The notes under the pieces were generated by a model. It was not told the origin of the DNA. It did not search any database and worked only from the letters and a program-made list of their open reading frames with translations. A program made the position numbers and the translations under genes. Of a stretch of 64,000 nt of DNA, positions 147 to 64,000 are shown piece after piece; position 1 is the first letter of the stretch, and each line of letters begins with the position of its first letter. Where the stretch lies: IMG/VR virus record IMGVR_UViG_3300046517_002304, positions 310,001-374,000 of that record; one strand, 5' to 3'.

Positions 147-999
147 GCGTAATCGTTCAGTCCACCGATTTCTACTCCACGCTTGCCCCTAATAAGCATC
201 GCTTTCCGCTCTCTCCGCGAAAGGACGGGAACGTAAACTAAAATCCACTCGCCCTTATGGGCTGGTTTTCGCTTTTTGCGTTTTATGATTGGCACGATTC
301 ACCATCCCCACAGAACATTATGGATTAAATATATAGCCAATGCCGGCCCTTCCATTATTAAAAAGAAAAGGCTAATGGTTAGACACCAAGCGTACATGTC
401 TTCATTAATATAATTCAGAGTATTTTCAAACTTATACTTATAATACCATGCCGTAAGAGCAAATAGTGCCGCCACAAAGGCAAATACTATCATTGCTGCA
501 ACTGCTAGTGGCATTGTGGGCGCTGTTCTTCTGCTTGTTTGATCCAAGTAGAGCAATAGCCGATGCTATCATCATCATGCCAGCATGACCGTACTTTGCC
601 AATCCAGTACATCACAAGGATATCACTGGATTGTTTGGCAACAGCTTCGCAATATTGCCAAAAACTCACTTAACTTCCTCTACCAAGAGGATTTCTTCGT
701 CCGGCTGCTCTTCAGTAATTCGATCTCTTGCATGTTTCTTAGACACACACTGGAGAACAAAATACTTGCCGGATTTTGTTTCAATTCGCCAAGGGGCAGA
801 CTTAGAAAGCCCTTCAATGTTAGCCTTCTTGGGTTCCGCTTCAACGGCGACAGGAGCCGCCACCTCAACTGCTTTCTTCTTCATTGTTTTCCTTACATGA
901 ACTTCGGTGCCATTTTCGGTTGTCTGGCTACCAGATGCGGTTTCAGAACCTTTTTTCTTCATCATGTCTTTCTATGGATAACTAAGGTTTGATTTTAAA

Positions 1000-1074
1000 A
1001 ACAATCATTCGGCTAATCCGCAAGTATCCCGGTGTTGCCACCCTGGTTTCACAGAGCTTAACCGAACAATTGTC
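1000..1074 (-). ncRNA. Candidate structured RNA element (17-bp stem closing a 41-nt loop containing a GNRA hairpin)
   Basis: GACAATTGTTCGGTTAA pairs with TTAGCCGAATGATTGTT using four G-U pairs that work only on the - strand; internal GGTG-GCAA-CACC. Confidence 0.45.
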
Positions 1075-1206
1075 TTATGTCTTTTTTGGCTTCGGCCACT
1101 TCAGATCTGCGGAATTCACAACCCCTTTACCCCGCCATTTTCCCTGAAGTCGGTCCCACAGTCGCCACTTGTCTCCATCCCGACGCATAATAAATCTGAT
1201 TTTCAT
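1075..1206 (-). CDS. Small basic hypothetical protein (43 aa, MKIRFIMRRDGDKWRLWD...)
   Basis: ATG directly after the stop of 1208..1519; below the ORF-track cutoff. Confidence 0.5.
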   Translation of the reverse strand: MKIRFIMRRDGDKWRLWDRLQGKWRGKGVVNSADLKWPKPKKT

Positions 1207-2810
1207 CTTACGCCTTCTTCAATCCAGCGCCGGGGGTTTTCTTCTTGGCCGAAAAATGAATTCGGTTACTGTTGTCGTAATGCCATTCGAATCTGGAATC
1301 GCCGCGAACCAGACCCTTCATAGCCCACACCAAATCTTTATCGTCGCAAGAAATGGAAACCATTGAACCGCTGATGAGCGTCTTCAAGTGTTCCGCTGCT
1401 TTGCTTGCGGCAGCATTCTGAGTCGCTTCACGACGACGCTCAAATCCGTCTCGCTTACGCTTCTCTTTATTCCAATCTCCGAGGGAAAACCCTTCAGCGA
1501 AGTTGCCCTTGCCAGCCATTTTAATTTCCTTTAAAAAAGGTTATTGAATTGTTATGAACTAGTATGGATAACTAAATTTCGATAATGTCTACAACAACGT
1601 CTTTTTCATCTAATATCAAAACTAAACATTCGGCATGTTTCTTATATTCATACAAATCTTTGTTATTCAAATTATCATTAGGTTTTTTGCGAACAGTTAG
1701 ATAACCCATTTTAACTAAATACTTTTCGGCTTTACCTACCTTCATTCCGATTGCGTTTGTTGTTTTCATATCTTGATAATTCTTGGGAATGCTTTTAATA
1801 TAACCTTATCAAATGCCTTACAGCAATCTTGCTGCAACCTGTCTATTACGGCATGTCTCCACGCGATATGAGATGGGCTAAGAAGACCCCCTGTAGGAGG
1901 GTCAACCTTATAATGCTTTTTCATACCTTGAAAAAATTGATCTTGCGATAAGCCAGTATCATTGTTCATAGCAACTTCTTGAGTAAATAAACCGCTTCTG
2001 ATATATCGCAATATGAATTCATTTTTAGTCATGGCTTGCTTTCCTTTCGCTCCGTATAACATTTTATCTCACTTACGTCTTGATATAATTTTGTGAATGA
2101 CTCTAATCCATGCTCTTCGCCTTGTGCGTTAATAAGAGCGGCAGCTTTATCGCAAATTACGCCGACTGTGAATCTGTCTCTACCTTCCCCTAAGCAATAG
2201 CACCAAGCACCGACCGCCATCCATTCTGGCTTAGGGCAGTCAGGATATATGTTAATCGTTGTCATGATTACTATTCTTTAAATCCTGTTTGTTTATTCTG
2301 CGGCGTCTTCGGCAGGCTCGCTCATATCTTTTCTTAGCCGCCCTTTTGTGTGCCGCACTTCTGTACCAGCCGCTATATTTTCTTGTGGCGGGATTATCAT
2401 GCCCGGGGCAACACCCGATATCTACCTTAGACAAATCGTCAAGAGCGTATGGTTTCATTTGTAGTCGTCCGGGTTTAACCACTTGCCTTTTCGGATGCGA
2501 TAAATTAAATGCAATACACCACTAAGAATAAATGATCCTATTTCATAAATTGCGATGCCCGCAAATATTAGTAAGAGCCAAAAAAGTGGATTATTTTCGT
2601 CCATTGTTCACCATTGCCAGCGAAGATGCGAAACAAGCCAAGCAACAAATCCAAGAAACGCAATATAACAAACCATGAGTATCACAAACTCAAATGGAGT
2701 TGCTTTCCCATGAGGCGTATCTGGATCACACCTTGAGCAAACCTCACCACGGCGGATTGCTTCGCGCTCTCCCATGTGTCGCTTGCACTGAGGGCAATGA
2801 GTTAGCATAA

Positions 2811-3629: not shown

Positions 3630-4014
3630 AGTGTTCCTTTCAGGAAGTTTGATTCTTATGGATAACTAAAAAGTGATTTTGATGAATCCATGTTCTGGAA
3701 GTTGCACAGGGTCTTCCTTAATAAATGTTCCGTACTTAAGAACATAATATCCTTCGCCAGTATATTCTACTGGAAGCGACTCGCTATATAAAGTTTTAAA
3801 TGGTCGCGTTACCTTAGCGATTCGTTCCATTTCTGCAAGAGTAAATGTAGATGTCATGCCACCACTCCCATTTCGCGCAAGTTCGCAATGAACATTCCAA
3901 ACAGAACAGCAAATCCGACCGACACAAGTAGTCCAAGCAATCCATTAAGACTAAGCCAAGCCAGCAATGCTGCGGCCATTACTTCCGTCACAATGATTTG
4001 TTTGATGTGTGGTT

Positions 4015-5388: not shown

Positions 5389-5582
5389 TTTCTGGCTTTC
5401 GCTCCATAATTAAAAGACCATTTGAATCATACATCTTAACATGCCAATCCTGGAGATACTGCTCTGCAAAAATTCTTTCAGCATCTTCTTTACGATAACC
5501 ACAGAATCCCCTGCGAATTCCTCTATTGCGGTTATCGTAGCAGTTTACTGTAAAGGTTTCAGCCATACATCATTATGGATAA

Positions 5583-7260
5583 CTAATGAGTAAAAGGCCC
5601 ATGATCGTCATGCCAGTCTTGGTCAATTTGTTGCTGGCTTCTGTTATCGGATGCATAGCGCCTATCTGCATCGTCATCTTCTTTTTTATCTTTATCTGAC
5701 GCAGAAAGTTCTGCCGCCACTTCGCCAAAATCCTTGGCAAATACGCTATCGTCTGAAAGTGCCTTTAATTCTTCATTGGTAAGATCAAATTTCTTTGTTT
5801 TTTCGGCTGCACAATCGTCATCAAAAATATCTTTTTGTGCGGTATCTAACAAGTTATAATCAAACAGTCTGCGAAACATGCCCACCGTTTGGCCCGGCAT
5901 AAAAATTGATTTAACATCATGCTTGACTGCTGTTATCCAAGTGATATCATGGTCCCTTCCATCGGGCCTTAATAAAGCACCAACAGCAACAACATCTAAA
6001 GACGCAAAATTAAGATTATTGCCAGATAACAGCTTCTTAAGTTCTTCTCGGCTATTGGTAAGTTTGCCGATCCAGAAGTCGTAAAGCAATTCTCTGGCTT
6101 CGTCCAGCGTTATGACGAGGACCGATTGTTTAATTGCCATGATTAATATCTTTCCTCAAATTCGCCAAGTGTTCTTCGGCTTTTCCGACAAGGAAGCATC
6201 CTGTTTGGAAGTCCATATTTTTGAAATGCCATTCTTTCAAAATCTCTTAGCCTACTAACTGAACCAGGCGGGTCTAACCAACCCAATTCATTAATGGCTT
6301 GAATTTCTTTATTCATACGATCATTAAAAGCACTATCATAGCTACGCCATGGGCTATATGCTACGTCGGATGCTCTTTTGGCTATTCTTTCTTCATTATG
6401 CTTACTAAGCATTGCCATCAACGGACTGTTCTTAGGTAGCATCGGCCCGTCATTAAGCGGCGCAACTGTTTTATCGTCGTCGCCTAATCCATGAAATTCA
6501 TTATACTTATCAAAAGCATCTCTTTCTTCTGGACTAAGATTATCATAAAACCATAAAGAATGCAAGACTTCGTTATCGCTAGATGCACACCCATAGACTG
6601 CTCTGGCCCCATATTTAGCAGCTACTTCTATTCCAATTCCGATATCGGAATACATATTACACGCTTCGTCATAGCTCATACTAGGAAAATGAGGAATAGA
6701 ATCAATAGTTCCTTCGGCAATTAATTTTTTCAAATGACTAGGATCATTGACAAGAGCATCAAATTGCCAGTCTATTAAGGCAACTCTCATCTCATCAAGC
6801 GTCAGAACGACGATAGGAAAAACTTCAGGCATGATTATGTCACCCCAAAATTTAAATCAACTTCTCCCATACCCTTATTCGCAACTTCAGGTACAGTGGA
6901 CTCTTGTGCATTATTAAGTTGTATATCACCAAAAAGATGCTTAACCTTTTCTTGTTCTTCTTCGCTTAGATGCTTCCATTGCCATACCATTATCATCCCG
7001 CTTCCTGTCCCAATCTGACTAATATAAACCGCTCCAGCTTTATATTGAATTCCATATTTTTCTGCGAGATTGAGGTCTTCGTATTGATCGCAAACTTCTT
7101 TATGAGAAATACTATTAAAGTTACCAAGTCCAGCGATAGTCCCGTCTTTAAGAGATTCCTTGAGATAGTTTCTATCATTTAATAAAGTTTGAGTTCTCCA
7201 CTCAAGGAGTTCTTCCTTGGCTTCTTCAAATGACAGAATGACTATTGGGAAGGCTCTCAT
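5583..7260 (-). CDS. Three tandem paralogous hypothetical proteins (5583-6140, 6143-6832, 6835-7260)
   Basis: Shared N-terminus (V/I)x(I/L)(T/S)xxExxxxLxxW...LxN...LK. Confidence 0.65.
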
Positions 7261-9219
7261 GATGATTTATGGATAACTAATTTGGTATGGATAGCCAGTT
7301 ATTCCTTTGAGGAAATTCTTAGCTTCATTGCCTTGTTCGTATAACTCCGTGCCACTCGTACAAAAGCATCGTAGCGGCATATCTTTTAATTTTTTAAGAG
7401 TATTCATGTGTATAATTCTTACAAATACACAGCGAGACTGATCTTTTTCCAAGAGTTTAAGAACCCACTTGAATTCTTTTTCTACTTGCTTTTCTTTAGC
7501 GGTCATTTCGCAGCAAGCCTATTTTTGATTTCGTAGATAATATTTTCTGGAACCGAAACATATACATGCTGATCGCCCGAACGAAATGGGAAAGCAGCAA
7601 TTCTGTTTTTAAAATCAATATGGGCTATAAATAAATCTGGAGCTGTCAAATCATCTACCGAAATCGTAGCATCAAACTTAGGATGCTTTGATTTCTCAAA
7701 ATTCCAATGACGCTCTTCGGTCATATCGCCGATCTTGAACGCTTGTTCTGTAATCATATTATTCATCCTTATCCCAAACAACCCTATGTCCACCTTCATC
7801 GTCAATCATATAAACTAGTATAAGCTTATCACCAAACTGGGACTTTAATCTTATAATCGCATCAGAATCAGACGATGCACGAACGCAAGGAGGATGCTCA
7901 TCCCACTTGTTAAAAACCGCATAGTAATCAAACTCAGGCATCAAACACGACCGAATCGTTTTCGCCGATTGTCCATAATGTTGCTTTACTTAATAGCTTT
8001 TTAATAGCCGGAACCGGCACTGGCCATGCTCGCATGATTTTAATCATAGTCTTTTTGCCGCTTCCGAAATAGCCGGCAATGCAAAATTTCACAATGTTTG
8101 GAGTGTAGACCATTTCAGTTGATGCGAGTCGGTATGTCATAGTATTTCCTTATGGATAACTAAATCAAGATAGGTTACCTGGCATGCCCTGCACTTTATC
8201 TGCTAAATGGCGAATTGCCTTTTTAACGTCAGATAATTGCGCCATCGTATTATTACATGTTATACAACCTGCAAATTCATTAATTAATTTTACCACATCT
8301 TCTCTAAGAAGATAAACCCCTTCATCTATTGTGTCGGATTTCTTAATATCCAATATCTTCATGGGACAGTAAAACTAAAATCATTTTTCATTGCATGCTC
8401 GCAATATTTTTTGCCAAGGTTTGAACATCACACCGAACATCCGTTTCTTGAGTTGCAGCGAATTCTAATAACAAATCAATAACGTCCATTTCGCAAAGAT
8501 ACTTTCGCCTGCTACCGACTGGATCAAAGCCGTTATCTACCGATACGCCGACGCGCACGCCAACCGGAATTGTTATAGAGCGAACTTTAATCATAATTCA
8601 ATTCCACTTATACCACAAGCATTTCCCATAAATTCTACGTCTAAGCCTTCGCCGACCAATGCCAATATATGCGTGGTCATATTTAATGCGTTGTATCCAG
8701 TAGCGTTCGCCTCCTTGGCTCCATCACGAAAAATGAGATACTCATTGTTTCTTATCGTTACTATATCGTTAGCCCTACATTCAGAAATTTTCACTTCGGT
8801 TCTCCCGTTAAAATCCAGTCAATCTTAGCAGCAGAGATAGCAACTCGGAGTTGTGCTTCTAGCGCTGTGGCCGATGTTGTTTTTCTATTTTTTAAAGCAA
8901 AGACGATTGACAGCAACTCAGCAGCCGAAATATCGCCATCAATTTTAACTCTATATTCTTCACCTGGAATTGGCTTAAGAGTAATCATTGCCACCAACCT
9001 TTATCTTGCGGTTTTCTTCTACTTGCATTTGAACTGCATGATAGCAATTTTTTACGCTATCTTCTCTATCGCAGCCATTGACATGGATTACCGGATTAAT
9101 ATCAAGGCAAACTGCTTCCATGCCGCTAGATAACACTAAAATATGAATTATACTATTCTCAACAACAACATGAACTAAATCACTGTCGTTGTTTAAATCA
9201 ATAATTCTGTTACGAAGCA

Positions 9220-9909: not shown

Positions 9910-10325
9910 GATTATTCCTTTCGTGAGCGAAATGGATAACTAGTGAAGAAACTCCTGAATGCATCAACTACATGTTTTGTTGTTAGCTGAACAATGTAAA
10001 TCAGTGTATATAAAAGACCGCCAAAGAAATTTTTGCCGAACATTATTCTTCATCCTCTTTTGTGTCTTTGTCCCTGGTTGCTTTCATAGCTAATCTTTTA
10101 GACGGATACTGGCCGTTTGCACAAACAACATAGCGGTGGTCAATTATAAACGAATGCCACGTTTGATTTTTATGTTGAACGACAAACCCTAATCCAGACC
10201 CAGGCGAAGGATTGCCTCTCCAGCTTAGTTGTCTATAAGTTGACAGGATAAAATCATCACGATTCTTCGGAAGATAAGGCTCTTCCGGATCTATTTTAGT
10301 CCATCTGTCCATGGTGTTTTCCTAA

Positions 10326-11862: not shown

Positions 11863-12165
11863 TGGCTATTTCCTATGGATAACTAAACCGTCTCCGACCC
11901 CTGTGCAACTATCGGCCTATGCATGTCCGTTTCTTACGCCTGCACACTATTAACATGCACACTTTTTACGGTTTAGCTTTGCTTATTGCTTCGCTTTCGC
12001 TATTAGCCATTCCAGTCCACTTTACGGAATAGCTCATGTCGCCAAGTTGTTTGCGGCAATAGCGGCAACGCGGGAATCTATTTTTGGGAACTGGAGAACG
12101 CCCCCAGTAGTAGGATGCGCAGTCGCAATTAACTCTCAGCACCCAATAATAGAATTTCTTCGTCA

Positions 12166-12354: not shown

Positions 12355-12416
12355 GATTGCATCTCTCTTTCTTTATTGAGTGATTGAACGCGGGTTTTGT
12401 AATGTATTATGGATAA

Positions 12417-12950
12417 CTAAAGTTTTGAACCAGAAATCATAAACGCAATCGGTAAAGTAAATCTTTTTTTACCGATATCAAGTTTAATTTCCTCGCCTAA
12501 TAAACCATCAATCCATTTCTCATTAAATTGCTGTTCGCTGACAAAAGTGTTTATATCATTTCCCATATAAGAATTTATCACATGATAAAGATCATGGTCA
12601 ACTCCTACAAGATTCATTGCGTGTATACTTAGTTTGCCACACTTATTGCGCTTGGCCACATCACTTTGTTCCGCACCTAAAATAATACAAGTATAATTCT
12701 TAAGCAAATACTTTTTTAAGCTGGCGATTGTTTTTAAGCCATCAATCACAATTACATCATGTTCAATAAACATTGCATTAACAGCGCTATAAAGCTGGCG
12801 AAACTCACGGCTTTCAACTTGACCGCCCATTGCATTTTGGATGCGGTCTATATCTATCGATTTCTCCATACATGCCGCAGCATTATAAATTGCAGTAGGT
12901 ACGCATTCGTATTCTCTACAAGTAGAGCGAATTGTTATATCGGTTCGCAT
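12417..12950 (-). CDS. Putative papain-like (C39-like) cysteine peptidase
   Basis: ECVPTAIYNA (Cys at helix start), HAMNLVG, INS. Confidence 0.4.
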   Translation of the reverse strand: MRTDITIRSTCREYECVPTAIYNAAACMEKSIDIDRIQNAMGGQVESREFRQLYSAVNAMFIEHDVIVIDGLKTIASLKKYLLKNYTCIILGAEQSDVAKRNKCGKLSIHAMNLVGVDHDLYHVINSYMGNDINTFVSEQQFNEKWIDGLLGEEIKLDIGKKRFTLPIAFMISGSKL

Positions 12951-13189: not shown

Positions 13190-13756
13190 TCATGACTTAA
13201 AGAACTCAACCAGCGAAGCTTTAACGAATTCATCATTACTTACTTGAACTCCATTAATCCAATATTCTTCTGTACGAGTCCTGGAATCAGGGAGATATAT
13301 TTTTGCAGGTCCGTTAAGGCGATGAAGTTTCCCATTCTGCCACCATGCCGTAAGGCTTTTTGTTTCTACGGCAGGACCACCTATACGGTGAGGTCTTCCA
13401 TGCTGGTACCATTTTTTTTGGAGGATTTCTCCGTCAAGACTCTCTATAAAGGCAGGAGCGCCTGCACAATGCACGCTTCCCGTATCGTCGTAATGTGTTT
13501 CATGAATAAAATCACAGGAATTTCTTATTACTCGCTTCGGCTCACCATTTGAATAAAACCAAGCTTCTTTAAATCTAGTTTTTTTATAAACAACTAGCCC
13601 ATCACAGACCCCGTAAACATTGCCATTTAATTTCCCATACACAATTTCTTCCTTTTTAACTTCTGGTTCAGGGATAACTACCGCTTTAACTTCATTCTTG
13701 CCGAAGAATGAAAGCAAGCCAACGGGAAAAATGCTAAGGAAATTTCTACGCTGCAT
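13190..13756 (-). CDS. Tat-signal HRxDGPA-repeat protein
   Basis: Likely start MQRRNFLSIFPVGLLSFFGKNEVKA; HRIGGPA, LHRLNGPA. Confidence 0.75.
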   Translation of the reverse strand: MQRRNFLSIFPVGLLSFFGKNEVKAVVIPEPEVKKEEIVYGKLNGNVYGVCDGLVVYKKTRFKEAWFYSNGEPKRVIRNSCDFIHETHYDDTGSVHCAGAPAFIESLDGEILQKKWYQHGRPHRIGGPAVETKSLTAWWQNGKLHRLNGPAKIYLPDSRTRTEEYWINGVQVSNDEFVKASLVEFFKS

Positions 13757-14353: not shown

Positions 14354-14380
14354 GTTATCCTCCGAAAAGGATATGGATAA

Positions 14381-15124
14381 CTAAGTTCTCGGACCAAAGT
14401 CGTGAGGGCTGAACATATGCCCGCCTGGACCGTAATCCAAGAGCAGTTGTTCATTATATCGCCTGAGCTTTACCGCATATGCAAGCGGATCTCTAGTTCC
14501 AGTTGCCAATGGGATTCTGTGGTGAATTTTTATTTTTCCATCTTTATCATTATAAAAAATAATATCACCACTATCACACCTAATCTGCGGAATACTCTCA
14601 GCATATGCAATGCAAGGATTAACAGAATGCTCTGATACTGGAACAGCAGGAAGATTATGAACGGCATTCCACCATTCTTCCCGATCCATACATTGACCAT
14701 TTAAAGCATAATAGCAAGTTTTACCGCTCTTCTGAATAACGGCCGGTCCATCTTCTCTGTGTCTAGCCCCATGCTGATAGTAGTGATGGCTATGAGTGCC
14801 ATCAACACATTTAATTATCATGGCCGGATTGTTGTCTCTATGAATAAGTCCATTTTCATCATACCAGCATTCTATAAGCGCTCCCTTTTTATAACGAACA
14901 ATCCCATCCTTAATGCCGATAGTTTCTTTTTCCCCGACAGAGTAAAAAATTCCATCATGGAAGTAAGATGGACTGTCTGCCATGTCGTCGTTTGGATATG
15001 TTGGGATTGGCTCCTCAGTATAAGAATCATCAGGCGATTCTGAGACAGCCGCAACGATAGGCTTAATTAAGCCAACGCTGGCGAACATTGCGGGGATTGC
15101 AGCAAAGAAATTACGTCGCTTCAT
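14381..15124 (-). CDS. Tat-signal HRxDGPA-repeat protein
   Basis: MKRRNFFAAIPAMFASVG...; IHRDNNPA, HREDGPA. Confidence 0.75.
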   Translation of the reverse strand: MKRRNFFAAIPAMFASVGLIKPIVAAVSESPDDSYTEEPIPTYPNDDMADSPSYFHDGIFYSVGEKETIGIKDGIVRYKKGALIECWYDENGLIHRDNNPAMIIKCVDGTHSHHYYQHGARHREDGPAVIQKSGKTCYYALNGQCMDREEWWNAVHNLPAVPVSEHSVNPCIAYAESIPQIRCDSGDIIFYNDKDGKIKIHHRIPLATGTRDPLAYAVKLRRYNEQLLLDYGPGGHMFSPHDFGPRT

Positions 15125-16036
15125 GGTTTATTCCTTAATTGCTCTTTTGAAGATGAAGGTTTTAATATTAGAAGATGTTACTAACGAAGAACTATGTTCA
15201 ACTCTTTCAATACTAACTAGCTCCCATCCATCATTGCCATACTTGTTTAGATACTCCTTTAGCAACCTAGCATCGGCCCCACAACAATCATTCTTTACCA
15301 TGTACTCCCACTTCATGATTGTTCTCCGCAGAAATCAGCGGACATCTTGCTGTCCACCAACTGGAACTAAATGGCTAACCAGAGTAAGCCTTTGTCTATG
15401 CGAAAGCGGCCACACAATTTGATATGTCATACTAAATGAATTATAATTTTGTCCAGAGCAGAAGTCATCACATACATCTTGCCCTTTGTCTCGGAGAATA
15501 AGAAATCGTTCTCCATGGATATCTTCCACAACATCCATAGCTTTACATTCGCGGAGTTTCATTGGCCTTGAATCCTCAATTCCCATTTATTGGGCATTTG
15601 TAGACACGTTTGAATAGGGATGCCATCTATACTATAGGCATGCGGAGAAGCTAAAGTCATACCTCTAATTTCTGTAAATATAAGAAACCAATTATCTCGC
15701 ACAATAATCTGTGAAATACGAACATTTTTCTGCTGGCATTTGGTTATTACTGCCATCATCGCATAAAACGAATCCCTGTTTGAATTTTCCATGATTGCTC
15801 CTTATGGATAACTAAATCAATGAAACTTGTGAAGGATGTACTCCATAAATACTATGCCCTTCAGTATTAGAAATCAACCACTCAGCATTTCTACCCCACC
15901 TTGGATTTTTACTTACTGCTATAAACTCCCCGATAAAATCGTTAAATAATTCTTTATGTCCCATTTCGTCTACGCCAGATACTTTAACTTTCGTGCAGTA
16001 GGCGGGAGGATTTTCCATGATTATTTATGGATAACT

Positions 16037-16070
16037 AAAAATAGCGGTAGGAATTCCTACCGCTATTTTT
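16037..16070. terminator. Intrinsic terminator, perfect 34-bp palindrome
   Basis: AAAAATAGCGGTAGGAATTCCTACCGCTATTTTT downstream of 16093..16377, abutting the motif copy at 16026. Confidence 0.8.
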
Positions 16071-22045: not shown

Positions 22046-22075
22046 GATGTTCCTTTATGGATAACTAAAAATCAG

Positions 22076-39328: not shown

Positions 39329-39397
39329 TTTTTTCTATGGATAACTAAAAACGACACTATCTTATGTTTAACCTAGTTTATATAATAAGGAAATACA

Positions 39398-42384: not shown

Positions 42385-42386
42385 GA

Positions 42387-47533: not shown

Positions 47534-47575
47534 CGTATGCCCTTTCTATGTTTTGAGATTTTGTAATATGGGTAA

Positions 47576-49526: not shown

Positions 49527-49862
49527 TAAGTCTAGGCAGATTTCTTGGCAGGACTTGAATCGTGCCATTTTATGATGGCTTTGACAGCAGCATTAATCAT
49601 ATCTTTTTTACTACTAAAATCTTTTTCCCAAAACATTCCGATGAAAAGTTTCCCGGGGGAATTCTTTTGAATTACATAGGCATTAAACGGGTTGACATCT
49701 GCTTTGAGCGATTCATGCTCAATGCTACCGATCAAAACGCTGTCGCGGTAAACCTGTTCAATATAAGATGTGCCTTCTTGCGTCCCTTGAACATTAACGG
49801 CTGGCATGGCGTTTTCCTTTGAGGAAAGATGGTTTTCTAACTCGCTTATGGATAACTAAATT

Positions 49863-50465: not shown

Positions 50466-50892
50466 GATTTTGCTCCTTATGCCACTTCGGCAGATTTTTT
50501 GACGATCTTGTTCTTGCGACCAGACTGCTTGAAACTCTTGGACGCCTTCAACTGTTTTTCAAGTTGCTTGGCAAAAGCAAATACAGACGGAGGCAACTTG
50601 CCGCCTACCGTACTATTCGGATCGTCATAGCCGTCAAAGGCTATGCTCATTAATTCCAGCGCTTCTGGATGATCGGCCAAATCAAGAATTAAATTTGTAA
50701 GTAATTCTGCTTGTTCAGAATTCATTACACAGGTAATGTCAAAGCCAACGCTTACGTTAAATGCAGGAGTTCTCATTTTCTATCCTCTAGTTGCCTTATG
50801 AAGTTTGCGTGAAGTTATGTTAAGATGGGTTATATAAGCACTATGGATAACTAAGAAAATTGATGCATCATAGATGCGACAATTGCTTCATG

Positions 50893-55041: not shown

Positions 55042-55988
55042 TTGTTTTTATGGATAACTATTTTGTTAGTTTTTAAATCCATGCTCATTAAGGATGTGCA
55101 TGGACCAACTATTTTCACTTTAGGATTATATACAATGCCTTTGCATTGTGTATATAAAAGCTTATCGTTCTCCCAATATTCCTTAACACCATTACTCCAC
55201 TCTACTGCCGGACCACCCACTCTATGCTGCAATCCATGTTTATGCCATGCCTTATATCCGCCCCTCATAATTACGGCAGGGCCGTCTTCTCGGTGTAAAT
55301 TACCATGAAAATACCATTCTTTCGTTCCATTGGTGTATTCGCAAGCCGGACCGGCTGCTCTATGTGGTTTATTATTAAAATACCAAATATTAGTTCCGTT
55401 TTCTTCCTCAATCGCCGGACCATCCTCACGATGAAGCATTCCGAGCTGCATCCACCTTTTTTGTCCGGATGCATATATTATGGCTGGACCTCCTATCCGA
55501 TGACACTGCCCATGATTCATCCAAGTAGTAGAAGATGGATTGATACGAGCAGGCCCATCTTCCCGATGGTATCTGCCATCTTCATCAAACCAAGACTCTT
55601 CATCATAATGTCCGCTTAACTTAAAATACCTTTTCTTTCCATTTATAAAACCGATTTTAATATCTTGACGACTTGAATCAGAATATTCTACATACTCCAT
55701 ATATTCTTTTTGTTCAGGCAATCCAAGCTTCTCTACATTAATGCCGCAAGTATAGATGAAATTTATAAGTTTATTTCTAAAGAAAGCCGAATCCTTAATA
55801 TCAAACTGTTCTTCGGCAGATTTCATAAACTCTTCATCGCACTCCTGTTTTTGAGTAAAAGCATAAACATTCTTAATATAAGAAATATAAAGCTTATCCT
55901 TCTTCGTGAAAGATTCCTTATCCACTCCTGTAGAAAGGAATGAAAGAAAGCCGGTCGGCAACAGTGAGAGGAAACTTCTTCGTAGCAT
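55035..55988 (-). CDS. Tat-signal HRxDGPA-repeat protein (six repeats)
   Basis: Likely start MLRRSFLSLLPTGFLSFL; HREDGPA/HRIGGPA/HRAAGPA/HRVGGPA. Confidence 0.75.
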   Translation of the reverse strand: MLRRSFLSLLPTGFLSFLSTGVDKESFTKKDKLYISYIKNVYAFTQKQECDEEFMKSAEEQFDIKDSAFFRNKLINFIYTCGINVEKLGLPEQKEYMEYVEYSDSSRQDIKIGFINGKKRYFKLSGHYDEESWFDEDGRYHREDGPARINPSSTTWMNHGQCHRIGGPAIIYASGQKRWMQLGMLHREDGPAIEEENGTNIWYFNNKPHRAAGPACEYTNGTKEWYFHGNLHREDGPAVIMRGGYKAWHKHGLQHRVGGPAVEWSNGVKEYWENDKLLYTQCKGIVYNPKVKIVGPCTSLMSMDLKTNKIVIHKNKC

Positions 55989-56159
55989 GATTAGCCTTTG
56001 TCTAGAATCCCGCAAGCATTAGATTCATAACCACAACATAAAAATCATTGTTAGCAGGTTGACAATCTGGATTGTCCGGACGAGCAAATGGATTATCCCA
56101 ATCGCGCACGATCAATGTGCAGTCTGCACCAGTAATCGGTTCGCCAAAAAGTATGATGC

Positions 56160-57059: not shown

Positions 57060-59182
57060 GGATTATTCTCTCAAGTATAGTAAAGTTCGTTCAGTCTGTC
57101 ATATACTTCTTTTTCTTGATATACTTCATCATGAATAGAATCTTCATCCTCATACACACCATCTTCTGTTTCGTCTTCATCTTCATTTTCTAAGAGAGCT
57201 TCATATTTTTGTTTAATTTCCTGCTGAAGCTTCTCAAGACCAAGCAAATACTCAAGCTCAGCCTGCAAAAGAAGACGGCAGTTATGTTCAGTCTGGCCAC
57301 GACAATAGCCACGATCAATGCCAACTACTTCATCGTCTCTGGCGTCAATCAATCCGAAATGAATTTTAGGCTTATCGCTCATGATTTGATCCTTTGTAAT
57401 GGCGCACCGCAATTTTTGCATCTAAGATTTAAAAAATCCATCGTTCGTAATTGCTGTCTGCAATATGGGCAAAGAATGGCTTTTTTCGTGAAGGTTACTG
57501 GCTTTAATGTAGTTCTACCCATTGTTATACCTTATTAAAAGTAATTTGAAAATGTGTGAGATACCGATCTGCTGGCATACAAGTTTTCCACCCTACATTC
57601 TTGAATTGTTCTAGGGCTAATCTAACAGTATCATAATCATAATTACGTGTACGCATAATATATGGCGGCTGCTGCGATGCAGGAAACGACCGCAGCCGTG
57701 CATCTATCTCGCTCACAAGCCTTCTAATAAGCCATTCACGATGAGCATTATCGCCCATATACTTGGTTCCCCACTCATACGGCTGAGTGCCCATTTCAGA
57801 TGGCTTAATAAGATTCATACTTTTTCTTTCAGCATTTTTAGTTTAAATTTAGCCTTATCATACTTTGCCTTTGTCCCGGCATACTCTTCGGCAGAAACAT
57901 TAGCTTTATAATTAACTGAATCAAGCCGCTTCTTGAGGAAGGCGACATATCCTTCCTCCAATTCAACAGCGGATTTATGATGTTCTTTTTTCATTGCATT
58001 TCACTAAGAGTAAAAAATGCATCGCCAACTTTGCTGATGAGATAATGAGCTAATTGTTTTCGTTGCCAGATACTCATACCGGCAATTTCATCCCCTAATT
58101 TTTGAATATCATCGCCGTCAAAAGACGTTCCAATGACAGGATTATTAGGAGGAGGATTGAGCGCCTCTAATGTTTCAGGCATTGCCAAACTCAGAATCAT
58201 CTTTGTCATCGGGACCATAGGTATTTCTAAACTTGCATAATTTAGTAATCACTTTTGCACACGACATATAGGCCAATGCCGTTAGAACAATTATCCACAA
58301 ACAAGCAGAAGGAATGAAAGTAATAGGAGAAATAATCCAAAGAAAAATCAACATCCCCCGACGCTTAAGGCATTCTTCATTCTTGTCTATAAAGTAATTA
58401 TAGAAATACAGCATTCCTAACAACAGATAGGAAATGATGACGTATTTCATCACAAAATCGGCACTAATGTACATGATTGTTCCTTTAGGGTGATGCTTTA
58501 TGGATAACTATTATTGCTTGGAATGCTCAAAATGCTTATCGTGTGATTCAAAGCAATGAAAAACGTAAGGTAGATTTGTATTTTCATTTAATTGATCGAA
58601 ATGAATCTCGTTGAGATTTTCCAGTCTGATTCTTCGCATGATAGGCTACATTCATCTTGATGTTCGCATTCTTTGCTTAATTTTTAAAAGCCGTCCAGTT
58701 TTTAGACTAGCTTACGTTGTTTTAGATTAGCTCAACTTCTATCGGCTGAACTTCGATTCTATTTTCAAAATCAGCCATAAACCTTCTAAGAACTCTGGGT
58801 GTCACGAATTGCTTTTCGTCTATCTGAATATAAAATCCACCAGCGAAAATCTTAGTCCCTTTCGGAACTACGTCCTTAATTGCCAAGGCAGTAGGACAAG
58901 TACTGGTCCCTCTTCTGCTGCCTTTAGCGATATGTTTTTCTGTGATGGAGAATTTCATGCTTGTCGCCATGCCCGAAAATGAATCCAACTAGCCATTCTA
59001 AAAATGGCATACGGCAGGATAAACGGAAACGTAACAGGCGAAAGAATAAAAAATCTAGCCCATTGATCTTCATTTTTGGCACAGCCACTTCTGTAGGCCG
59101 AAAGCCAAATTAAGCCGCATACAATGTAAGAAATAACAAAGTAGTATGGATCGCAGTAGACCTCAATTTTCGGCATCATGAT

Positions 59183-60069: not shown

Positions 60070-61186
60070 GGATTCCTATGGATAACTAATTATTTCTTAG
60101 CAGTAGGAATTTCAATCAGCCGAACGCTGTCCCACGAATCAGGAACAAACCAAGAAATGAAAAATCGCTTGTTGTTGATGTGATATGTTGCGATTTCCTG
60201 ATTTTTCTCAGCCACCTTTCCAAGAATACTGGACGCGGCAGGAGAAGTTGGATCAACTTTACTTAAATCAGAGCGAAGCTGTTCAATAGCGGCTTGTTCG
60301 CCCGTAAAATTAATCTGTTCCACACCGCCTATTATACAGGCAAAAAACAATACAAGGCATATAACACAAGTGAAAAGAATTTCGCCTTCTGTGAAGTCTT
60401 TCATGGTTTCACTTTCTGATTGATTGGTCTATGATTGTTTGGATGAATTTATATAAGCAAATACAAAAACCAGCAAACCAAATCATGGCTATAATACCCT
60501 CCAGACAAAACCATCCCATCTCTTCTGCTAAAATAAAACTCATAACTTTTACCTTTCCTTTACCGGAGTATCTTTGACCTTGCTGATTTCCAAGTCAAGC
60601 AAATCCGCAAGCTTCCTTAAATGATCCGATGACATTATGGCCCCAGACAACTGGAATGTTGCCGAATTAGTGTAGGAACACAAGGTTAATTCTTGCGTAA
60701 TAAAAACATCACGGTCACCGTCTATCAGCGGAAGAGTCTCGTGAATATCGGTAGTTAAAATTAACTGTTCCCCCCCGTTTGATGTTTTATTAAAGGCATA
60801 AGACAATCTTTTTTTTACTACTGATGGCATTTTTTACCTTTCGCTCCAAGGTGATGGATGAACACAATCATTGCAACCGGCGCAATAAACGCCATTTTTA
60901 TTGTTCCCGCCAAAATAACCGCAATCATCAAACTGAAGATTAATCTTCCCGCAATGACCGCAAGGCGTTAGATTCGCATCATATTCGCACGCTCTAACTA
61001 AATAATATATCTCGCCATTAACTGCATAATCTCCAACATATCCTAATAAAAAATCTGGACTTACATTTGTGTTAAAGTTTTTTTCTACACATTGAATTGA
61101 GCGTTCTCTAATTAAGTTCCTAAGCTGATATACTGTCATCCCCCAATACCTAGCAATAGAATCAAAGCATTTCTTATCTTTTTTAC

Positions 61187-61978
61187 TTAACTTATTGAAG
61201 TGCATATGAATTCCCTACGCAATTCTAGAACTACATCTTTGACTTCTTGACCATTGATAATAATTAATTGCTTTCTGAAAAACTCAACTGCTGCACCAAT
61301 CGCTGGCCCTACGCGGTCAATTAATATCTTGTCTAAAATTGAAGACTTAATCTGTTCTTTAATTTGCTCTTTTGCTATACTTGTTTTCGGAATAAACTGC
61401 TCTAAAAAAGTTCTTTCGTTCTTTAATCTTATCAGATTATATCTACCCAAATATTTTCTCGGCACTAATGATGCTTCTCTATTTAAGCCTATATGCTTTT
61501 TCACAACTTCAATAACGACTTCATCTGTAATTGGATGTATATTTTGTTGCTGGCAATCCGATAATATCAACCTAAGTAATCCAAGACAACTCGCCCTATG
61601 CATCATTGCGTCTTGTATTATAATTCTTATCTTTTCTATAAGAGATAAGTCTTTTCCTATACACTCCAATAATTGCCCGCCGAATGATCGTAAATTTTTA
61701 ATATAGTAGCTTAACTTCTCGTCTTCCTCTTCCGCCCTACGTGAGTTACACTTTCTACAAGATAATACTGTTCTAGGCTCCCATGTCGGATTTGGCTTTA
61801 AGCGCTTGGCAAAGTTTAATCTTGAATTCAAGTGGTCAATAGTAGCGTCCTGCTCTTGTCTATTAATTTCTTTTGCGAGACTTGGCCTTAATGTGGTTGG
61901 CTTTTCACACCAATGACAACGCGGATCTAGTCGGTGTAAGCGCTCTAAACGCCTGCGGAGTCGGCGACTTTGGTGCAT
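61187..61978 (-). CDS. HNH endonuclease domain fused to a YqeY/GatB-like helical domain
   Basis: CHWC...ATIDHL...VLSCRKCN; then LLRLILSD...TDEVVIEVVKK...E..FLEQFIPK...GPAIG...NGQEVKDVV. Confidence 0.6.
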   Translation of the reverse strand: MHQSRRLRRRLERLHRLDPRCHWCEKPTTLRPSLAKEINRQEQDATIDHLNSRLNFAKRLKPNPTWEPRTVLSCRKCNSRRAEEEDEKLSYYIKNLRSFGGQLLECIGKDLSLIEKIRIIIQDAMMHRASCLGLLRLILSDCQQQNIHPITDEVVIEVVKKHIGLNREASLVPRKYLGRYNLIRLKNERTFLEQFIPKTSIAKEQIKEQIKSSILDKILIDRVGPAIGAAVEFFRKQLIIINGQEVKDVVLELRREFICTSIS

Positions 61979-64000
61979 TCTGCTGGTTCCGGTATATCAA
62001 TGCTTTCATCCGTAAAATCTTCTATGTCAAAGTCAGCCTTCAACGCCTTGCCTCTTGATGACAACCATACTACCACATCTTTGTTATCTTGTGGATTTTT
62101 TTTAGTGTTATAAAACCTCATCCAAAATCTATCCTTGCCCATTCGCTCCATGTGAAACGAACATCTAGAAGCAGAATCAGATACAACAATTTCGTCTAAA
62201 TCACCGTGCTTATCAAGACGGATTAATAGATTACCGACCCTTATTTCTTTTGTCATTATTTTTCTTACCTTTAATTGGTTTTTTAACGGGCGGCTTTCTA
62301 GGGGCTGCCGGCCTTCTAGACCCACCATGAAACATATTAAATAAATCATTATAAGTCATATACGTTATTCCTTCTGACTGACGGGGAGCCTCAGCCTGCT
62401 GTACTCCTCCTTCGCCAGACTCGCGCTCTTCTGCTGCTTGCATGCCCCGCTCAAAATCGGAAGCTTGCTGTGCTGGAGCTGATCTACGTTGGTCGGTCTT
62501 CTTTGGTGTATTCCCATTAATCATGACATTTACATACTCTGTTGATAACTTCTTAACGTCAATTACGCGAGTGTCAACCGAAAACACCCAAGGCTCATTG
62601 TAGTATTGCCCTCCACCATTAACATGCAATCGCACTGCAATGAAAGGCAGTTCAATCGCCTTAATTTCCATTACAGATCCATATAATCCAGTATCGTTGT
62701 TGGTAGCAGTAATAAACATGCCAACGTCTAAATCGTCGGCGCGAGTGATGAACGGACTTGACATTATTCTCTCCTCAGGAGCAATGATTCTACCTTGCAC
62801 TTCAAGGCATCAACCTCTTCCACATGCTCAAGATGATACTTCTTCATCAAGTGAGAAATCTGGTTGACGGCCGCAGTGTTATGGCAGTTTCTTTCAAGAA
62901 ATTCCAATGCAACTAAGGCAAGGGAAACTTCTTTTCTATTGAACTTCATTATTAGTGCCTGAGTTCCTCAAAGGAAATATAAAGTGCAGCAATAATGCAG
63001 GAAATAGCCGGGATAAGACATTCGGTATTTCCACTGCTAACCATAATCATACATCTCGTAAACGAGATGCCTAAAAAAACTAAAAGTAAAGTGCGGAAAA
63101 AGGCATGCGAAAGTCGTAGAAAGGTTTTCATGATGGTTCCTTATGGATAACTAAGTTTCGAAAGGATGTTAAAATTTGATCATATTCATACGTAGCCGAA
63201 TTTCTTTCACTGTTTACCCATTCCGTAACCCACTGAATGGCCTTCGCCATATTCTCTTCTGTGATTGCGTCATAAGTCACCCAGCCATACTCGTCATCTA
63301 TCGTATAGCCAAACTCATGCCCATAATACGTTCTGCAAAATTTAAACTCAGCAATACTGTTATGGTGATACAAGCCTTTTTGATGCTTATCAGGAGTAAA
63401 CCCCCACTTAGTTAAGAAATCATGATCTGCTTGTGAAATGCCTTCTGGTAGATTCATGATTTCGCATTCCACAAAGAATTTTCAATGCAGGCTAATTCTT
63501 CGACGGCTCTTTTATGATGTAGAAGAATTTCATTAGTATCATAAAGGCAGGATTTCATGATTTGCCTGATTGCCCAAGCTACGGTGCGACTGGTAATTTT
63601 TCTTATAAAAGTATTTACTTTGGGAAATTCTGGTGAATAATAATCAAGACAAAAGTATTCTTCTTCCCAATGCTGGCACGCAAAATGCATGCCTTTAATA
63701 GTTTTATGTCTGATGTTTATAACCTTAATGTCAGCATCAGGCAGGCCGACCTCATCATTCTTATAAAGATAAATTGGATCACCAAATCCAAACTTATGCA
63801 GAATAGCAATTTGTCTGCTGGTAAGCTTCTTCACTGTATCTCTACCCCGTTACGGAGCCACAAATTCCACTGAATCATTTCTAATCGTCTTTTGCGGATA
63901 CGACGATATTCTTCTCTGGTAATCAGATCATCGCTTTTCATAAAACGATGAACATAACAATCTCGTAGCACGGTTCTATCCGCTATATCAAGACGGGTGT

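What the first reader, a model, noticed from the sequence alone, without database searches (positions are those of the whole stretch)
973..63153. Strictly oriented 12-bp motif TAGTTATCCATA, about 37 copies: probable phage-specific promoter
Seen: 30 exact copies and 7 variants, all co-oriented with the - strand genes; I noticed none reversed. Chance expectation is roughly 0.01 copies. Spacing to the next ATG is concentrated at 7 nt (973,5574,7268,16026,20123,29215,39336,55049,60077) and 10 nt (8151,15803,17398,20822,22056,25529,27569,30670,43311). One copy precedes a non-coding RNA (22228) and one directly follows a terminator (16026), which favours a promoter over a ribosome-binding site. Established: T4 late and phiKZ-type polymerases use short single-block promoters. 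Inference: recognised by a phage sigma factor or RNAP and giving leaderless or very short-leader mRNAs, consistent with the frequent lack of an SD.
Basis: partly seen in the sequence, partly recalled or inferred. Interest (0 to 1): 0.8.

Follow-up and report, generated by a model that had tools for sequence, protein, structure and literature searches.

The report
Megaphage promoter motif heading leaderless genes
A short DNA word repeated dozens of times, always pointing the same way just in front of genes of a 511-kb uncultivated phage, is most likely that phage's own promoter, read by a sigma factor the phage encodes; this is a familiar kind of signal, seen here in a phage group whose gene expression has not been studied.

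Summary
TAGTTATCCATA occurs 30 times in the window, always on the - strand, where 0 are expected. The invariant unit is T-A-G-T-T-A-T-C-C-N-T. It has 36 copies in the window and 93 in about 128 kb of the source contig (IMG/VR 3300046517_002304, 511 kb), and none on the other strand. It occupies a one-directional block of small genes, about 278-409 kb.

There is no conservation upstream of the motif. The start codon sits exactly 10 nt (31 copies, no SD) or 13 nt (12 copies) after the 9-mer, and almost never closer. Other copies lie 21-52 nt from an ordinary SD-led start.

Several arrangements point to DNA-level initiation:
- Three copies abut strong terminator hairpins.
- One copy overlaps a perfect sigma-70 promoter.
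- The first gene after each opposite-strand gene carries a copy.

The phage encodes a divergent sigma-70-family factor whose operon is headed by the motif. Two related phages (proteins 30-58% identical) keep the same motif at syntenic sites. A more distant relative with another sigma has a different motif.

Verdict: a phage-specific single-block promoter, probably sigma-directed and giving leaderless mRNAs. It is a new member of a known kind. One point is unexplained: the motif's TAG is the stop codon of the upstream gene in 45 of 85 copies.

The parts
63142..63153 (-). motif copy (ATA class); ATG 10 nt after the 12-mer, gene 62952-63131
60077..60088 (-). motif copy; ATG 7 nt after, gene 59548-60069 (NADAR-like)
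58499..58510 (-). motif copy; SD-led ATG 24 nt after, gene 58175-58474
55049..55060 (-). motif copy; ATG 7 nt after, gene 54220-55041 (metallo-beta-lactamase fold)
50842..50853 (-). motif copy; start 65 nt after
49847..49858 (-). motif copy; SD-led ATG 39 nt after
47567..47578 (-). one-mismatch copy TAGTTACCCATA; its TAG is the stop of the upstream ORF; the Ro60-like gene starts 33 nt after
43849..43860 (-). motif copy (GTA); TAG is the upstream stop; ATG 9 nt after
43311..43322 (-). motif copy; TAG is the upstream stop; ATG 10 nt after
40739..40750 (-). motif copy (GTA) inside the 3' end of the upstream ORF; SD-led ATG 49 nt after
39336..39347 (-). motif copy; ATG 7 nt after; first - strand gene after the + strand gene 39398-39697
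39295..39306 (-). motif copy (GTA) internal to gene 38951-39328, in the only frame the motif leaves open
34478..34489 (-). motif copy; SD-led ATG 32 nt after
30670..30681 (-). motif copy; ATG 10 nt after
30168..30179 (-). motif copy (CTT); TAG is the upstream stop; ATG 10 nt after
29215..29226 (-). motif copy; TAG is the upstream stop; ATG 7 nt after
27569..27580 (-). motif copy; TAG is the upstream stop; ATG 10 nt after
25529..25540 (-). motif copy; ATG 10 nt after
22228..22239 (-). motif copy; TAG is the upstream stop; followed by the ORF-free spacer 22068-22227
22056..22067 (-). motif copy; ATG 10 nt after
20822..20833 (-). motif copy; TAG is the upstream stop; ATG 10 nt after
20123..20134 (-). 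motif copy; ATG 7 nt after
17398..17409 (-). motif copy; ATG 10 nt after; directly preceded by the hairpin 17412-17439 plus a T-run
16449..16460 (-). motif copy; no start codon within about 60 nt
16026..16037 (-). motif copy; ATG 7 nt after; directly preceded by a GC-rich palindromic hairpin plus TTTT (about 16038-16070)
15803..15814 (-). motif copy; TAG is the upstream stop; ATG 10 nt after
14372..14383 (-). motif copy; TAG is the upstream stop; SD-led ATG 18 nt after
13669..13680 (-). motif copy (CTG), in or at the edge of coding sequence
12408..12419 (-). motif copy; TAG is the upstream stop; start 45 nt after
11874..11885 (-). motif copy; ATG 11 nt after
9931..9942 (-). motif copy (ATT); SD-led ATG 21 nt after
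8151..8162 (-). motif copy; ATG 10 nt after
7286..7297 (-). degenerate copy TGGCTATCCATA, 6 nt upstream of the next copy
7268..7279 (-). motif copy; ATG 7 nt after
5574..5585 (-). motif copy; TAG is the upstream stop; ATG 7 nt after
3657..3668 (-). motif copy; TAG is the upstream stop; SD-led GTG 27 nt after (BaxI-like gene)
1563..1574 (-). motif copy; TAG is the upstream stop; SD-led ATG 43 nt after
973..984 (-). motif copy; ATG 7 nt after, gene 666-965
33119..33146 (-). perfect host-type promoter TTGACA-16 (with TG)-TATAAT, 9 nt before the SD-less ATG at 33109. It is not part of the motif family, but it shows that host RNAP is used and that near-leaderless geometry occurs

Best explanation
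The motif (T)TAGTTATCC-N-T-W-(R) is a single-block promoter specific to this megaphage and its close relatives. It acts on DNA, in one orientation, in front of single genes or short operons of a block of small accessory genes about 131 kb long.

The most likely reader is the host core RNA polymerase carrying a phage-encoded, divergent sigma-70-family factor. This is a 267-aa protein at contig position about 405 kb, outside the window. Its own operon is headed by a motif copy, so it would be self-reinforcing.

By the usual geometry of -10-type elements, transcription would start about 7 nt after the 13-nt block. That is the A of the ATG in the commonest arrangement, giving leaderless mRNAs. The next arrangement would give a 3-nt leader, and the remaining copies ordinary SD-containing leaders.

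What is shown: the anatomy, the orientation, the spacing, the conservation in relatives, and the existence and fold family of the sigma.

What is inferred: that the motif starts transcription, that this sigma reads it, and where the start site lies.
For: 1. Statistics and anatomy.
- 30 exact 12-mers against 0 expected.
- 85 cores on the sense strand and 0 antisense in 102 kb. T at position 11 is invariant although it was not selected for. Positions -40 to -2 carry no information.
- 8 more copies further upstream, all on the same strand.
- Conservation is all-or-none: 85 exact, but only 7 (sense) against 3 (antisense) with one mismatch. This pattern is typical of phage-polymerase or phage-sigma promoters.

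2. Link to gene starts.
- 64 of 85 copies lie 52 nt or less upstream of a predicted start. Distances from the core are 10 nt (31 copies), 13 nt (12 copies), 11-15 nt (6 copies) and 21-52 nt (14 copies).
- Distances below 10 are virtually absent, and copies pile up at exactly 10. This is what is expected if the ATG cannot lie upstream of a fixed start site.
- 42 of 43 starts at 10 or 13 nt are ATG, and the 10-nt class has no SD.

3. Not a ribosome-binding site.
- 39 copies have the start codon elsewhere, often with their own SD.
- In the relative L291 the copies are 30-44 nt from start codons.

4. Evidence for a DNA-level restart.
- Three copies begin right at the T-run of strong hairpin terminators (-18 to -28 kcal/mol).
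- The copy at contig 397,088 begins 2 nt after a perfect TTGACA-16-TATAAT. A host-initiated RNA would therefore lack the motif's 5' part.
- The first co-oriented gene after each of three opposite-strand genes has a copy.

5. A reader exists.
- The protein L126:7477-8331 has weak matches to Pfam Sigma70_r3 and to the PHROG sigma family.
- Its homologue P0004 reaches the Sigma70_r2 cut-off.
- A 3-sequence profile hits only sigma factors in the PDB: 49 of 49 hits, best E = 1.9e-6, spanning regions 2-4.
- The AF2 model's top 50 Foldseek hits are all sigma factors.

6. Phylogenetic footprint.
- L167 (sigma 32% identical, GC 32%) has the exact 12-mer before its NUDIX-sigma operon, as in this phage. 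The flanking DNA is unrelated.
- L291 (clamp loader 55% identical) has 4 sense and 0 antisense copies in 15.5 kb, where 0.015 are expected. Two of them are at syntenic junctions.
- L292 has a different sigma and a different conserved intergenic motif, which again precedes the sigma gene.

7. Precedent.
- AR9 and phiKZ-type early promoters are about 13-nt blocks with the start site 6 nt downstream (PMC5312081).
- Jumbo phages without their own RNAP carry sigma factors (PMC7824862).

8. Territory. The motif is confined to about 278-409 kb of a 511-kb genome, as expected of a regulatory or temporal class.
Against: - No transcript data exist.
- The sigma-motif link rests on co-occurrence and on the motif heading the sigma operon in two phages. 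L291 keeps the motif on a 19-kb contig that shows no sigma gene.
- I saw only about a quarter of the genome, so a phage RNA polymerase elsewhere is not excluded.
- The motif does not resemble TATAAT and cannot be mapped onto A-11/T-7. The sigma has a region 4, yet there is no -35-like block.
- In 45 of 85 copies the motif's TAG is the in-frame stop of the upstream ORF. Only 2 ORFs stop at +10 and 10 read through. A pure promoter model does not predict this frame bias, which hints at an additional RNA-level or translational role.
- In part of the 13-nt class an AGGA lies between the motif and the predicted start site. It would therefore be outside the promoter's own transcript.
- In the dense region there would be a promoter before almost every 200-400-bp gene (2 per kb), which is unusually many.
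Confidence: 0.66

Rival explanations
1. The motif is a promoter, but for a phage-encoded RNA polymerase (single-subunit T7-like, or multisubunit phiKZ-like) rather than a sigma factor. Transcription would start at the purine right after the 12-mer and give 7- or 10-nt leaders.
For: - Exact 12-13-nt conservation and an A/T-rich 3' end followed by a purine (74 of 85), often GG or AGG, recall T7/SP6-type ...TATA|G promoters.
- The distant relative L292 has a 26-nt intergenic motif with TAATAC... and ...TATAGGG ends.
- In the 13-nt class an AGGA directly after the motif would then lie inside the transcript.
Against: - No RNA polymerase gene was seen in the roughly 128 kb examined, whereas a sigma factor was.
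- Perfect host-type promoters show that host RNAP is used.
- A start at position 13 does not explain why no start codon lies closer than 7 nt to the 12-mer, nor why 31 copies sit at exactly 7.
- In the relatives, position 13 is a purine in only 2 of 5 copies, while position 20 is A in 4 of 5.
Confidence: 0.14
2. The motif works in RNA as a gene-junction signal on long polycistronic transcripts. It would supply the upstream stop codon and mark a site for termination-reinitiation or for endonucleolytic processing, so that an SD-less ATG 16 nt after the stop can be translated. It might pair with ribosomal RNA.
For: - The TAG of the motif is the in-frame stop of the upstream ORF in 45 of 85 copies, against 2 stops at +10 and 10 read-throughs.
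- The five one-mismatch variants at position 1 all recreate an overlapping TGA, TAA or TAG.
- The distance to the ATG is fixed and there is no SD in the 10-nt class.
- In the dense region almost every gene has a copy.
- The core is the exact reverse complement of GGAUAACUA in E. coli 16S rRNA.
- The phage encodes a ribosome recycling factor.
Against: - Three copies start at the T-run of strong terminators, so they would not be in the upstream transcript.
- One copy would be truncated by the host-type promoter that overlaps it.
- Copies follow opposite-strand genes.
- 39 copies, and all copies in relative L291, are far from the start codon and have separate SDs.
- 40 of 85 copies do not supply a stop.
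- The host is unknown, the complementarity ends exactly at the 9-mer, and that rRNA stretch is not known to contact mRNA (my own knowledge).
Confidence: 0.13
3. The motif is a DNA site for something other than transcription initiation: an operator for a repressor or activator, or a short homology that lets small gene cassettes recombine (as with the T4 promoter-early stem-loops).
For: - The gene block is a mosaic of small accessory genes with several paralogue families.
- The motif bounds genes precisely.
- The same 12-mer is found next to non-homologous flanks in relatives.
Against: - An operator needs a promoter, and nothing else is conserved within 40 nt upstream.
- Sigma-70-like sites are not enriched.
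- Strict single orientation and a fixed distance to ATG are not required for recombination.
- Motif-led genes are mostly not paralogues.
- Recombination at repeated promoters would be a by-product, not an alternative to promoter function.
Confidence: 0.06

Closest known systems
Single-block promoters read by phage sigma factors (T4 late TATAAATA with gp55; phiEco32 tAATGTAtA with gp36)
   Same: One short, highly conserved block with no -35 element. It is read by host core RNAP carrying a phage-encoded sigma-family protein, and it defines a class of phage genes. A sigma-70-family gene is present here.
   Different: The sequence is unrelated, longer (11-13 nt) and not TATA-like. The sigma here has regions 2-4, unlike gp55. 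The block sits so close to the ATG that many mRNAs would be leaderless. Recognition by the sigma is not shown. The comparison with T4 and phiEco32 is from my own knowledge.
Early promoters of phiKZ-like jumbo phages (AR9: AAATATATATTAT-(6N)-G+1)
   Same: A roughly 13-nt, nearly invariant block that tolerates almost no mismatch, with the start site 6 nt downstream (PMC5312081). If the start is the conserved A at position 20, the geometry here is the same: a 13-nt block, 6 nt, then +1.
   Different: Those promoters are read by a virion multisubunit RNAP without sigma, are AT-only, and give 26-491-nt leaders. Here no phage RNAP was found, and leaders would be 0-3 nt or SD-containing.
T7/SP6-type single-subunit RNAP promoters
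   Same: Exact conservation over many copies, strict orientation, an A/T-rich 3' end followed by a purine, and placement directly after terminators.
   Different: The motif is shorter (12-13 nt against about 23 nt), has no conserved initially transcribed sequence, and no such polymerase gene was seen. The spacing data argue against a start at the motif's 3' edge.
Autoregulated alternative (ECF-type) sigma factor promoters
   Same: The sigma's own operon is preceded by the motif it is proposed to read, in two phages. A divergent sigma in a third phage goes with a different motif, which also precedes its gene.
   Different: ECF promoters are bipartite (-35 and -10). This sigma is closer to group 1/3 sigmas in PDB searches.
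Leaderless-gene promoters of Actinobacteria, Deinococcus and archaea
   Same: The promoter element lies at a fixed short distance from an ATG that lacks an SD, and the start codon is almost always ATG.
   Different: Those use the housekeeping -10 (TANNNT). Here most other genes of the same phage use a normal AAGGA SD, so two initiation modes coexist in one block.
T4-type promoter-early stem-loop (PeSL) cassettes
   Same: Repeated regulatory cassettes (terminator hairpin plus promoter) between small accessory genes. Three copies here have exactly this layout.
   Different: Only 3 of 85 copies have the hairpin. PeSL promoters are host sigma-70 early promoters. A role in shuffling was not tested here.

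Membership tests
Promoter (any class) | Primary transcript 5' ends at a fixed offset downstream | not testable with these tools
   The phage is uncultivated and no transcript data were reachable.
Promoter (any class) | Co-oriented with and upstream of genes, over-represented, absent from the antisense strand | tested here: met
   93 sense and 0 antisense copies in about 128 kb. 64 of 85 lie 52 nt or less upstream of a start.
Promoter (any class) | Present where transcription must restart (after terminators, after opposite-strand genes) | tested here: met
   3 terminator-adjacent copies. A copy follows each of 3 opposite-strand genes.
Sigma-70-family-dependent promoter | A cognate sigma factor is encoded | tested here: met
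   P0001 profile: 49 of 49 PDB hits are sigma factors, best E = 1.9e-6. The Foldseek top 50 are all sigma. The homologue P0004 reaches the Pfam Sigma70_r2 cut-off.
Sigma-70-family-dependent promoter | That sigma binds the motif and directs initiation from it | not testable with these tools
   Only indirect support: the motif heads the sigma operon in two phages, and a different sigma goes with a different motif in L292.
Sigma-70-family-dependent promoter | -10-like element with A-11/T-7, and a -35 or extended -10 element | tested here: not met
   No TANNNT register fits, and there is no upstream block. This holds for canonical sigma-70. Phage sigmas such as gp55 and gp36 also fail this test (own knowledge).
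T7-like single-subunit RNAP promoter | About 23-bp conserved block from -17 to +6 and a phage ssRNAP gene | tested here: inconclusive
   The block is only 11-13 nt and there is no conserved +1 to +6. No RNAP gene was seen, but only about 25% of the genome was examined.
Shine-Dalgarno / ribosome-binding site | Fixed short distance to every start codon it serves, and complementarity to the 16S 3' end | tested here: not met
   39 of 84 copies, and all copies in L291, are at variable and longer distances with their own SD. There is no anti-SD complementarity. Other genes use AAGGA.
Leaderless mRNA design | Start codon at the transcription start, ATG only, no SD | tested here: inconclusive
   31 copies have an SD-less ATG exactly 10 nt from the core. 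There is a hard lower bound at 10, and 42 of 43 starts are ATG. The start site itself is unknown.
Dispersed repeat / mobile element / tandem duplication | Conservation extends into the flanks, or the copies sit in paralogous genes | tested here: not met
   The flanks carry no information. Motif-led genes are mostly not paralogues.

The most novel reading that the evidence does not exclude
The motif is a dual-purpose gene-junction signal. The same 13 nt would end translation of one gene (TAG), start transcription and/or re-start translation of the next SD-less gene 16 nt further on, and in RNA might pair with 16S rRNA (GGAUAACUA). That would be a bacterial-virus counterpart of the termination-reinitiation elements of caliciviruses, possibly working with the phage's own ribosome recycling factor. 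My evidence does not exclude that the stop-codon bias (45 of 85 copies) reflects such a translational role on top of promoter activity.
Probability: 0.08. Interest if true: 0.85.

Novelty: new member of a known kind. Interest (0 to 1): 0.5.

Why it matters
The transcription programme of phages above 500 kb is essentially unknown, because almost none are cultivated. This work provides four things:
- a precisely defined candidate promoter;
- a candidate cognate sigma factor;
- the territory of the promoter (about a quarter of the genome);
- two relatives that keep the motif.

Together these make the regulatory logic of one megaphage lineage testable in vitro without culturing it.

If the sigma-motif pair is confirmed, it would be a compact orthogonal expression switch. 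It would also be an example of systematic leaderless expression in a phage whose other genes use ordinary Shine-Dalgarno sites. The motif is also a practical marker for finding and orienting contigs of this lineage.

Tried and rejected
- **Close relatives in the phage collection.** Megablast of 20 kb of the window against INPHARED found nothing. tblastn with the Ro60-like protein gave only matches of 47% identity or less in unrelated phages.
- **Relatives by protein in IMG/VR.** The 775-aa protein, the sigma profile A1 and the clamp-loader profile A2 found only the source contig. A1 in the metagenome collection found nothing.
- **Paired-core scan.** Searching the metagenome collection for TAGTTATCC-N231-261-TAGTTATCC returned 120 or more loci. 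They are chance pairs (I had underestimated the expected number, which is about 1,000) or unrelated tandem and coding repeats with conserved flanks and no T11/ATG geometry. This was uninformative.
- **The L292-type motif.** It is not arrayed in IMG/VR.
- **Single-sequence structure prediction.** The model of the sigma alone was too poor to use (pLDDT 43.5). The 3-sequence alignment gave a usable model.
- **Leaderless -10 elements in general.** There is no general enrichment of TANNNT at leaderless distance before genes without the motif, only two cases.
- **Hairpins.** Hairpins upstream of the motif are only weakly enriched overall: 11 of 85 fall below the 5th percentile of random windows. The terminator-promoter layout is therefore the exception.
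- **DnaA box.** TTATCCACA resembles the motif, but I rejected this reading because the 3' triplet varies (TTT, CTT, GTA...).
- **TAG reassignment.** Rejected: the ATG is out of frame with the TAG, and standard-code ORFs cover 96% of the window.
- **Spacer 22068-22227.** No Rfam family matches it.
- **Genome walking.** This was limited. One look-up had no record and one returned no DNA.

Full report
**Source and setting**

The window is identical to part of IMG/VR contig 3300046517_002304 (511,233 bp), at about 310,001-374,000 in the same orientation. It holds about 156 small ORFs, almost all on the - strand, at 39-40% G+C with a steady negative GC skew.

Recognisable genes are accessory ones:
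- a Ro60/TROVE-like protein;
- two RNA ligases;
- a BaxI-like protein;
- CoaB/CoaC-like proteins;
- a metallo-beta-lactamase-fold protein;
- an HNH endonuclease;
- a tRNA-Met.

No close relative exists in the phage collection.

**The observation**

TAGTTATCCATA occurs 30 times, always on the - strand, where 0 are expected. K-mer counts show that the invariant part is TAGTTATCC, with 36 copies on - and 0 on +.

I assembled about 102 kb around the window from loci that are 100% identical where they overlap. In it there are 85 cores on the gene strand and none on the other strand.
- T at position 11 is invariant, although it was not part of the search.
- A T is preferred just before the motif.
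- The triplet after the core is N-T-W.
- Position 13 is a purine in 74 of 85 copies.
- Positions -40 to -2 carry no information.

Eight more copies lie further upstream, all on the same strand. With one mismatch allowed there are only 7 sense and 3 antisense sites, so conservation is all-or-none.

**Distribution**

Density rises along the direction of transcription:

| Contig region | Copies per kb |
|---|---|
| 374-382 kb | 0.4 |
| window (310-374 kb) | 0.56 |
| 300-310 kb | about 1 |
| 278-299 kb | 1.6-2.0 |

In the 278-299 kb region nearly every gene has a copy, and the 3' triplet is mostly TTT, CTT, GTA, GTT or ATT instead of ATA.

An untruncated scan of IMG/VR for the 12-mer followed by a purine, six bases and ATG hits this contig only between 278.9 and 406.2 kb, always on the - strand. 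The outermost copy seen is at 409,231. The next 6.5 kb of same-strand genes have none. The motif therefore marks a territory of about 131 kb, a quarter of the genome.

**Relation to genes**

- Distances from the end of the core to the predicted start codon are 10 nt (31 copies), 13 nt (12), 11-15 nt (6) and 21-52 nt (14).
- The 10-nt class has an A-rich, G-poor spacer with no SD.
- The 13-nt class often has AGGA right after the motif and ATC before the ATG.
- 42 of 43 of these starts are ATG.
- Genes without the motif use an ordinary AAGGA site 5-9 nt from the ATG.
- 39 copies have their start codon elsewhere, often behind their own SD.
- Motif-led genes are mostly not paralogues.

**DNA level or RNA level**

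Several arrangements need a fresh start of transcription.
- Three copies begin at the T-run of strong GC-rich hairpins: window 16026 and 17398, and one copy just outside the window (-18 to -28 kcal/mol).
- The copy at contig 397,088 begins 2 nt after a perfect TTGACA-16-TATAAT, so a host-initiated RNA would start inside the motif.
- The first co-oriented gene after each of three opposite-strand genes carries a copy. These genes are a GroES-like ORF in the window, a 266-aa ORF just outside it, and a histidine phosphatase at about 409 kb.
- A second perfect host-type promoter lies at window 33146-33119, 9 nt before an SD-less ATG. It shows that host RNAP is used and that near-leaderless geometry occurs in this phage.

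**A candidate reader**

At contig position about 405 kb, a motif copy heads an operon of a NUDIX protein, a 267/284-aa protein and an AAA+ clamp-loader-like protein. The evidence that the middle protein is a divergent sigma-70-family factor is as follows.
- It has weak Pfam Sigma70_r3 and PHROG sigma matches.
- An exhaustive HMMER search found few homologues.
- One homologue reaches the Sigma70_r2 cut-off.
- A three-sequence profile matches only sigma factors among solved structures: 49 of 49 hits, best E = 1.9e-6, covering regions 2 to 4.
- The alignment-based model (pLDDT 67.5) has only sigma factors among its top 50 Foldseek hits.

**Relatives**

- **L167.** The homologous sigma (32% identical) lies on a 5.8-kb contig of 32% G+C with the same gene order. 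The exact 12-mer, with TTT before it and G after, sits before its NUDIX-sigma operon, while the flanking DNA is unrelated. A one-mismatch copy with the 7-nt-to-ATG geometry lies 2.8 kb upstream.
- **L291.** Its clamp loader is 55% identical. It has four exact cores plus T11 on the gene strand and none on the other strand in 15.5 kb, where 0.015 are expected. Two are at syntenic junctions and lie 30-44 nt from start codons.
- **L292.** Its clamp loader is 35% identical and it has its own, very different sigma. It lacks the motif but has another conserved intergenic word, AATTAAT-N7-TACCTTAWA, before the sigma gene and three other genes.

The motif is thus under selection across a lineage, does not depend on a fixed distance to the ATG, and changes when the sigma changes.

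**Mechanism proposed**

The motif is a single-block promoter. The phage sigma probably directs host core RNAP to it. The start site is probably about 7 nt after the 13-nt block, at position 20. I give three reasons.
- No start codon lies closer than that, and 31 lie exactly there.
- Position 20 is A in 65 of 85 copies, and in 4 of 5 copies in the relatives.
- The geometry equals that of -10-type elements and of AR9/phiKZ early promoters.

This gives leaderless mRNAs for the 10-nt class. The alternative start, at position 13, is less likely but not excluded.

**What remains unexplained**

In 45 of 85 copies the motif's TAG is the in-frame stop of the upstream ORF. Only 2 ORFs stop at +10 and 10 read through. 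The five variants with a mismatch at position 1 each recreate an overlapping stop codon. This frame bias is not predicted by a promoter alone. It keeps alive an added translational role (stop and restart). The exact complementarity of the core to GGAUAACUA of E. coli 16S rRNA and the phage's ribosome recycling factor are curiosities that point the same way, but they do not outweigh the DNA-level evidence.

**Comparison and verdict**

In kind, this is a phage-specific promoter like those of T4 late genes, phiEco32, AR9/phiKZ or T7. The literature I could search describes sigma factors in jumbo and huge phages but no defined promoter for a phage of this size. It is a new member of a known kind. 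Its unusual features are per-gene density, a shared stop codon and a probable leaderless design. Nothing was left out as a referred step.

Noticed in passing
window 33119-33146 (-); also contig 397,0xx (L169 about 18684-18713): Two perfect 12/12 sigma-70 consensus promoters (TTGACA-16-TATAAT). One is 9 nt before an SD-less ATG and the other is 2 nt before a motif copy. They are probably strong host-RNAP early promoters.
   Followed up: partly
L126:7477-8331 (-) = contig about 405.0-405.9 kb, outside the window: A divergent sigma-70-family factor (267 aa) in a NUDIX-sigma-clamp-loader operon. It has very few homologues in 1.8 billion representative proteins.
   Followed up: yes
L169:3508-3969 (+), contig about 411.8-412.3 kb: The phage encodes a ribosome recycling factor (Pfam RRF, E = 1.9e-26).
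   Followed up: no
window 46064-47533 (-), 48042-48116 (-), 35396-36151 (-), 56160-57059 (-): An RNA-handling set: a Ro60/TROVE-like protein (DUF2828+DUF7788), tRNA-Met(CAT) and two Rnl-type RNA ligases. No Y-RNA-like Rfam match was found.
   Followed up: partly
window 22068-22227 (-): A 160-nt ORF-free spacer between two motif copies. Its fold is moderately stable (z = -2.5). It contains CACCUCC, which resembles the 16S 3' end, and it has no Rfam family.
   Followed up: partly
window 39398-39697 (+) and 39686-40249 (-): A lone + strand ORF with a weak Cpn10/GroES match, converging on an HNH endonuclease gene. This is one of the few interruptions of the one-strand gene block.
   Followed up: partly
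window 16038-16070 (-) and L118 about 20100-20137: Two perfectly palindromic terminator hairpins share a GGAATTCC centre, and each runs straight into a motif copy.
   Followed up: partly
window 55035-56015, 50893-51519, 49863-50465, 47576-47974, 14381-15124, 14042-14353, 13190-13777, 4015-4677 (all -): A nine-member paralogue family of unknown function is scattered through the block. A second family of eight small proteins lies mostly at 278-289 kb.
   Followed up: no
window 54220-55041 (-), 52003-52389 (-), 41314-43103 (-), 2811-3629 (-): Accessory genes: a metallo-beta-lactamase fold with a weak anti-Pycsar Apyc1 mark, a SET-domain protein, CoaB-like and CoaC-like genes (the latter fused to an M23 peptidase domain), and a BaxI-like membrane protein. 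NAMPT and PRPP-transferase genes lie just upstream of the window.
   Followed up: no
L292 about 800-4200 (ENA ERZ27335239): A distant relative has its own 26-nt intergenic motif, AATTAAT-N7-TACCTTAWA, before its sigma gene and three other genes. Its ends resemble a T7 promoter (TAATAC...TATAGGG).
   Followed up: partly
motif core, all copies: TAGTTATCC is the exact reverse complement of GGATAACTA in E. coli 16S rRNA (confirmed in 5,426 of 5,426 genomes). The host of this phage is unknown, and the match stops at the 9-mer.
   Followed up: partly
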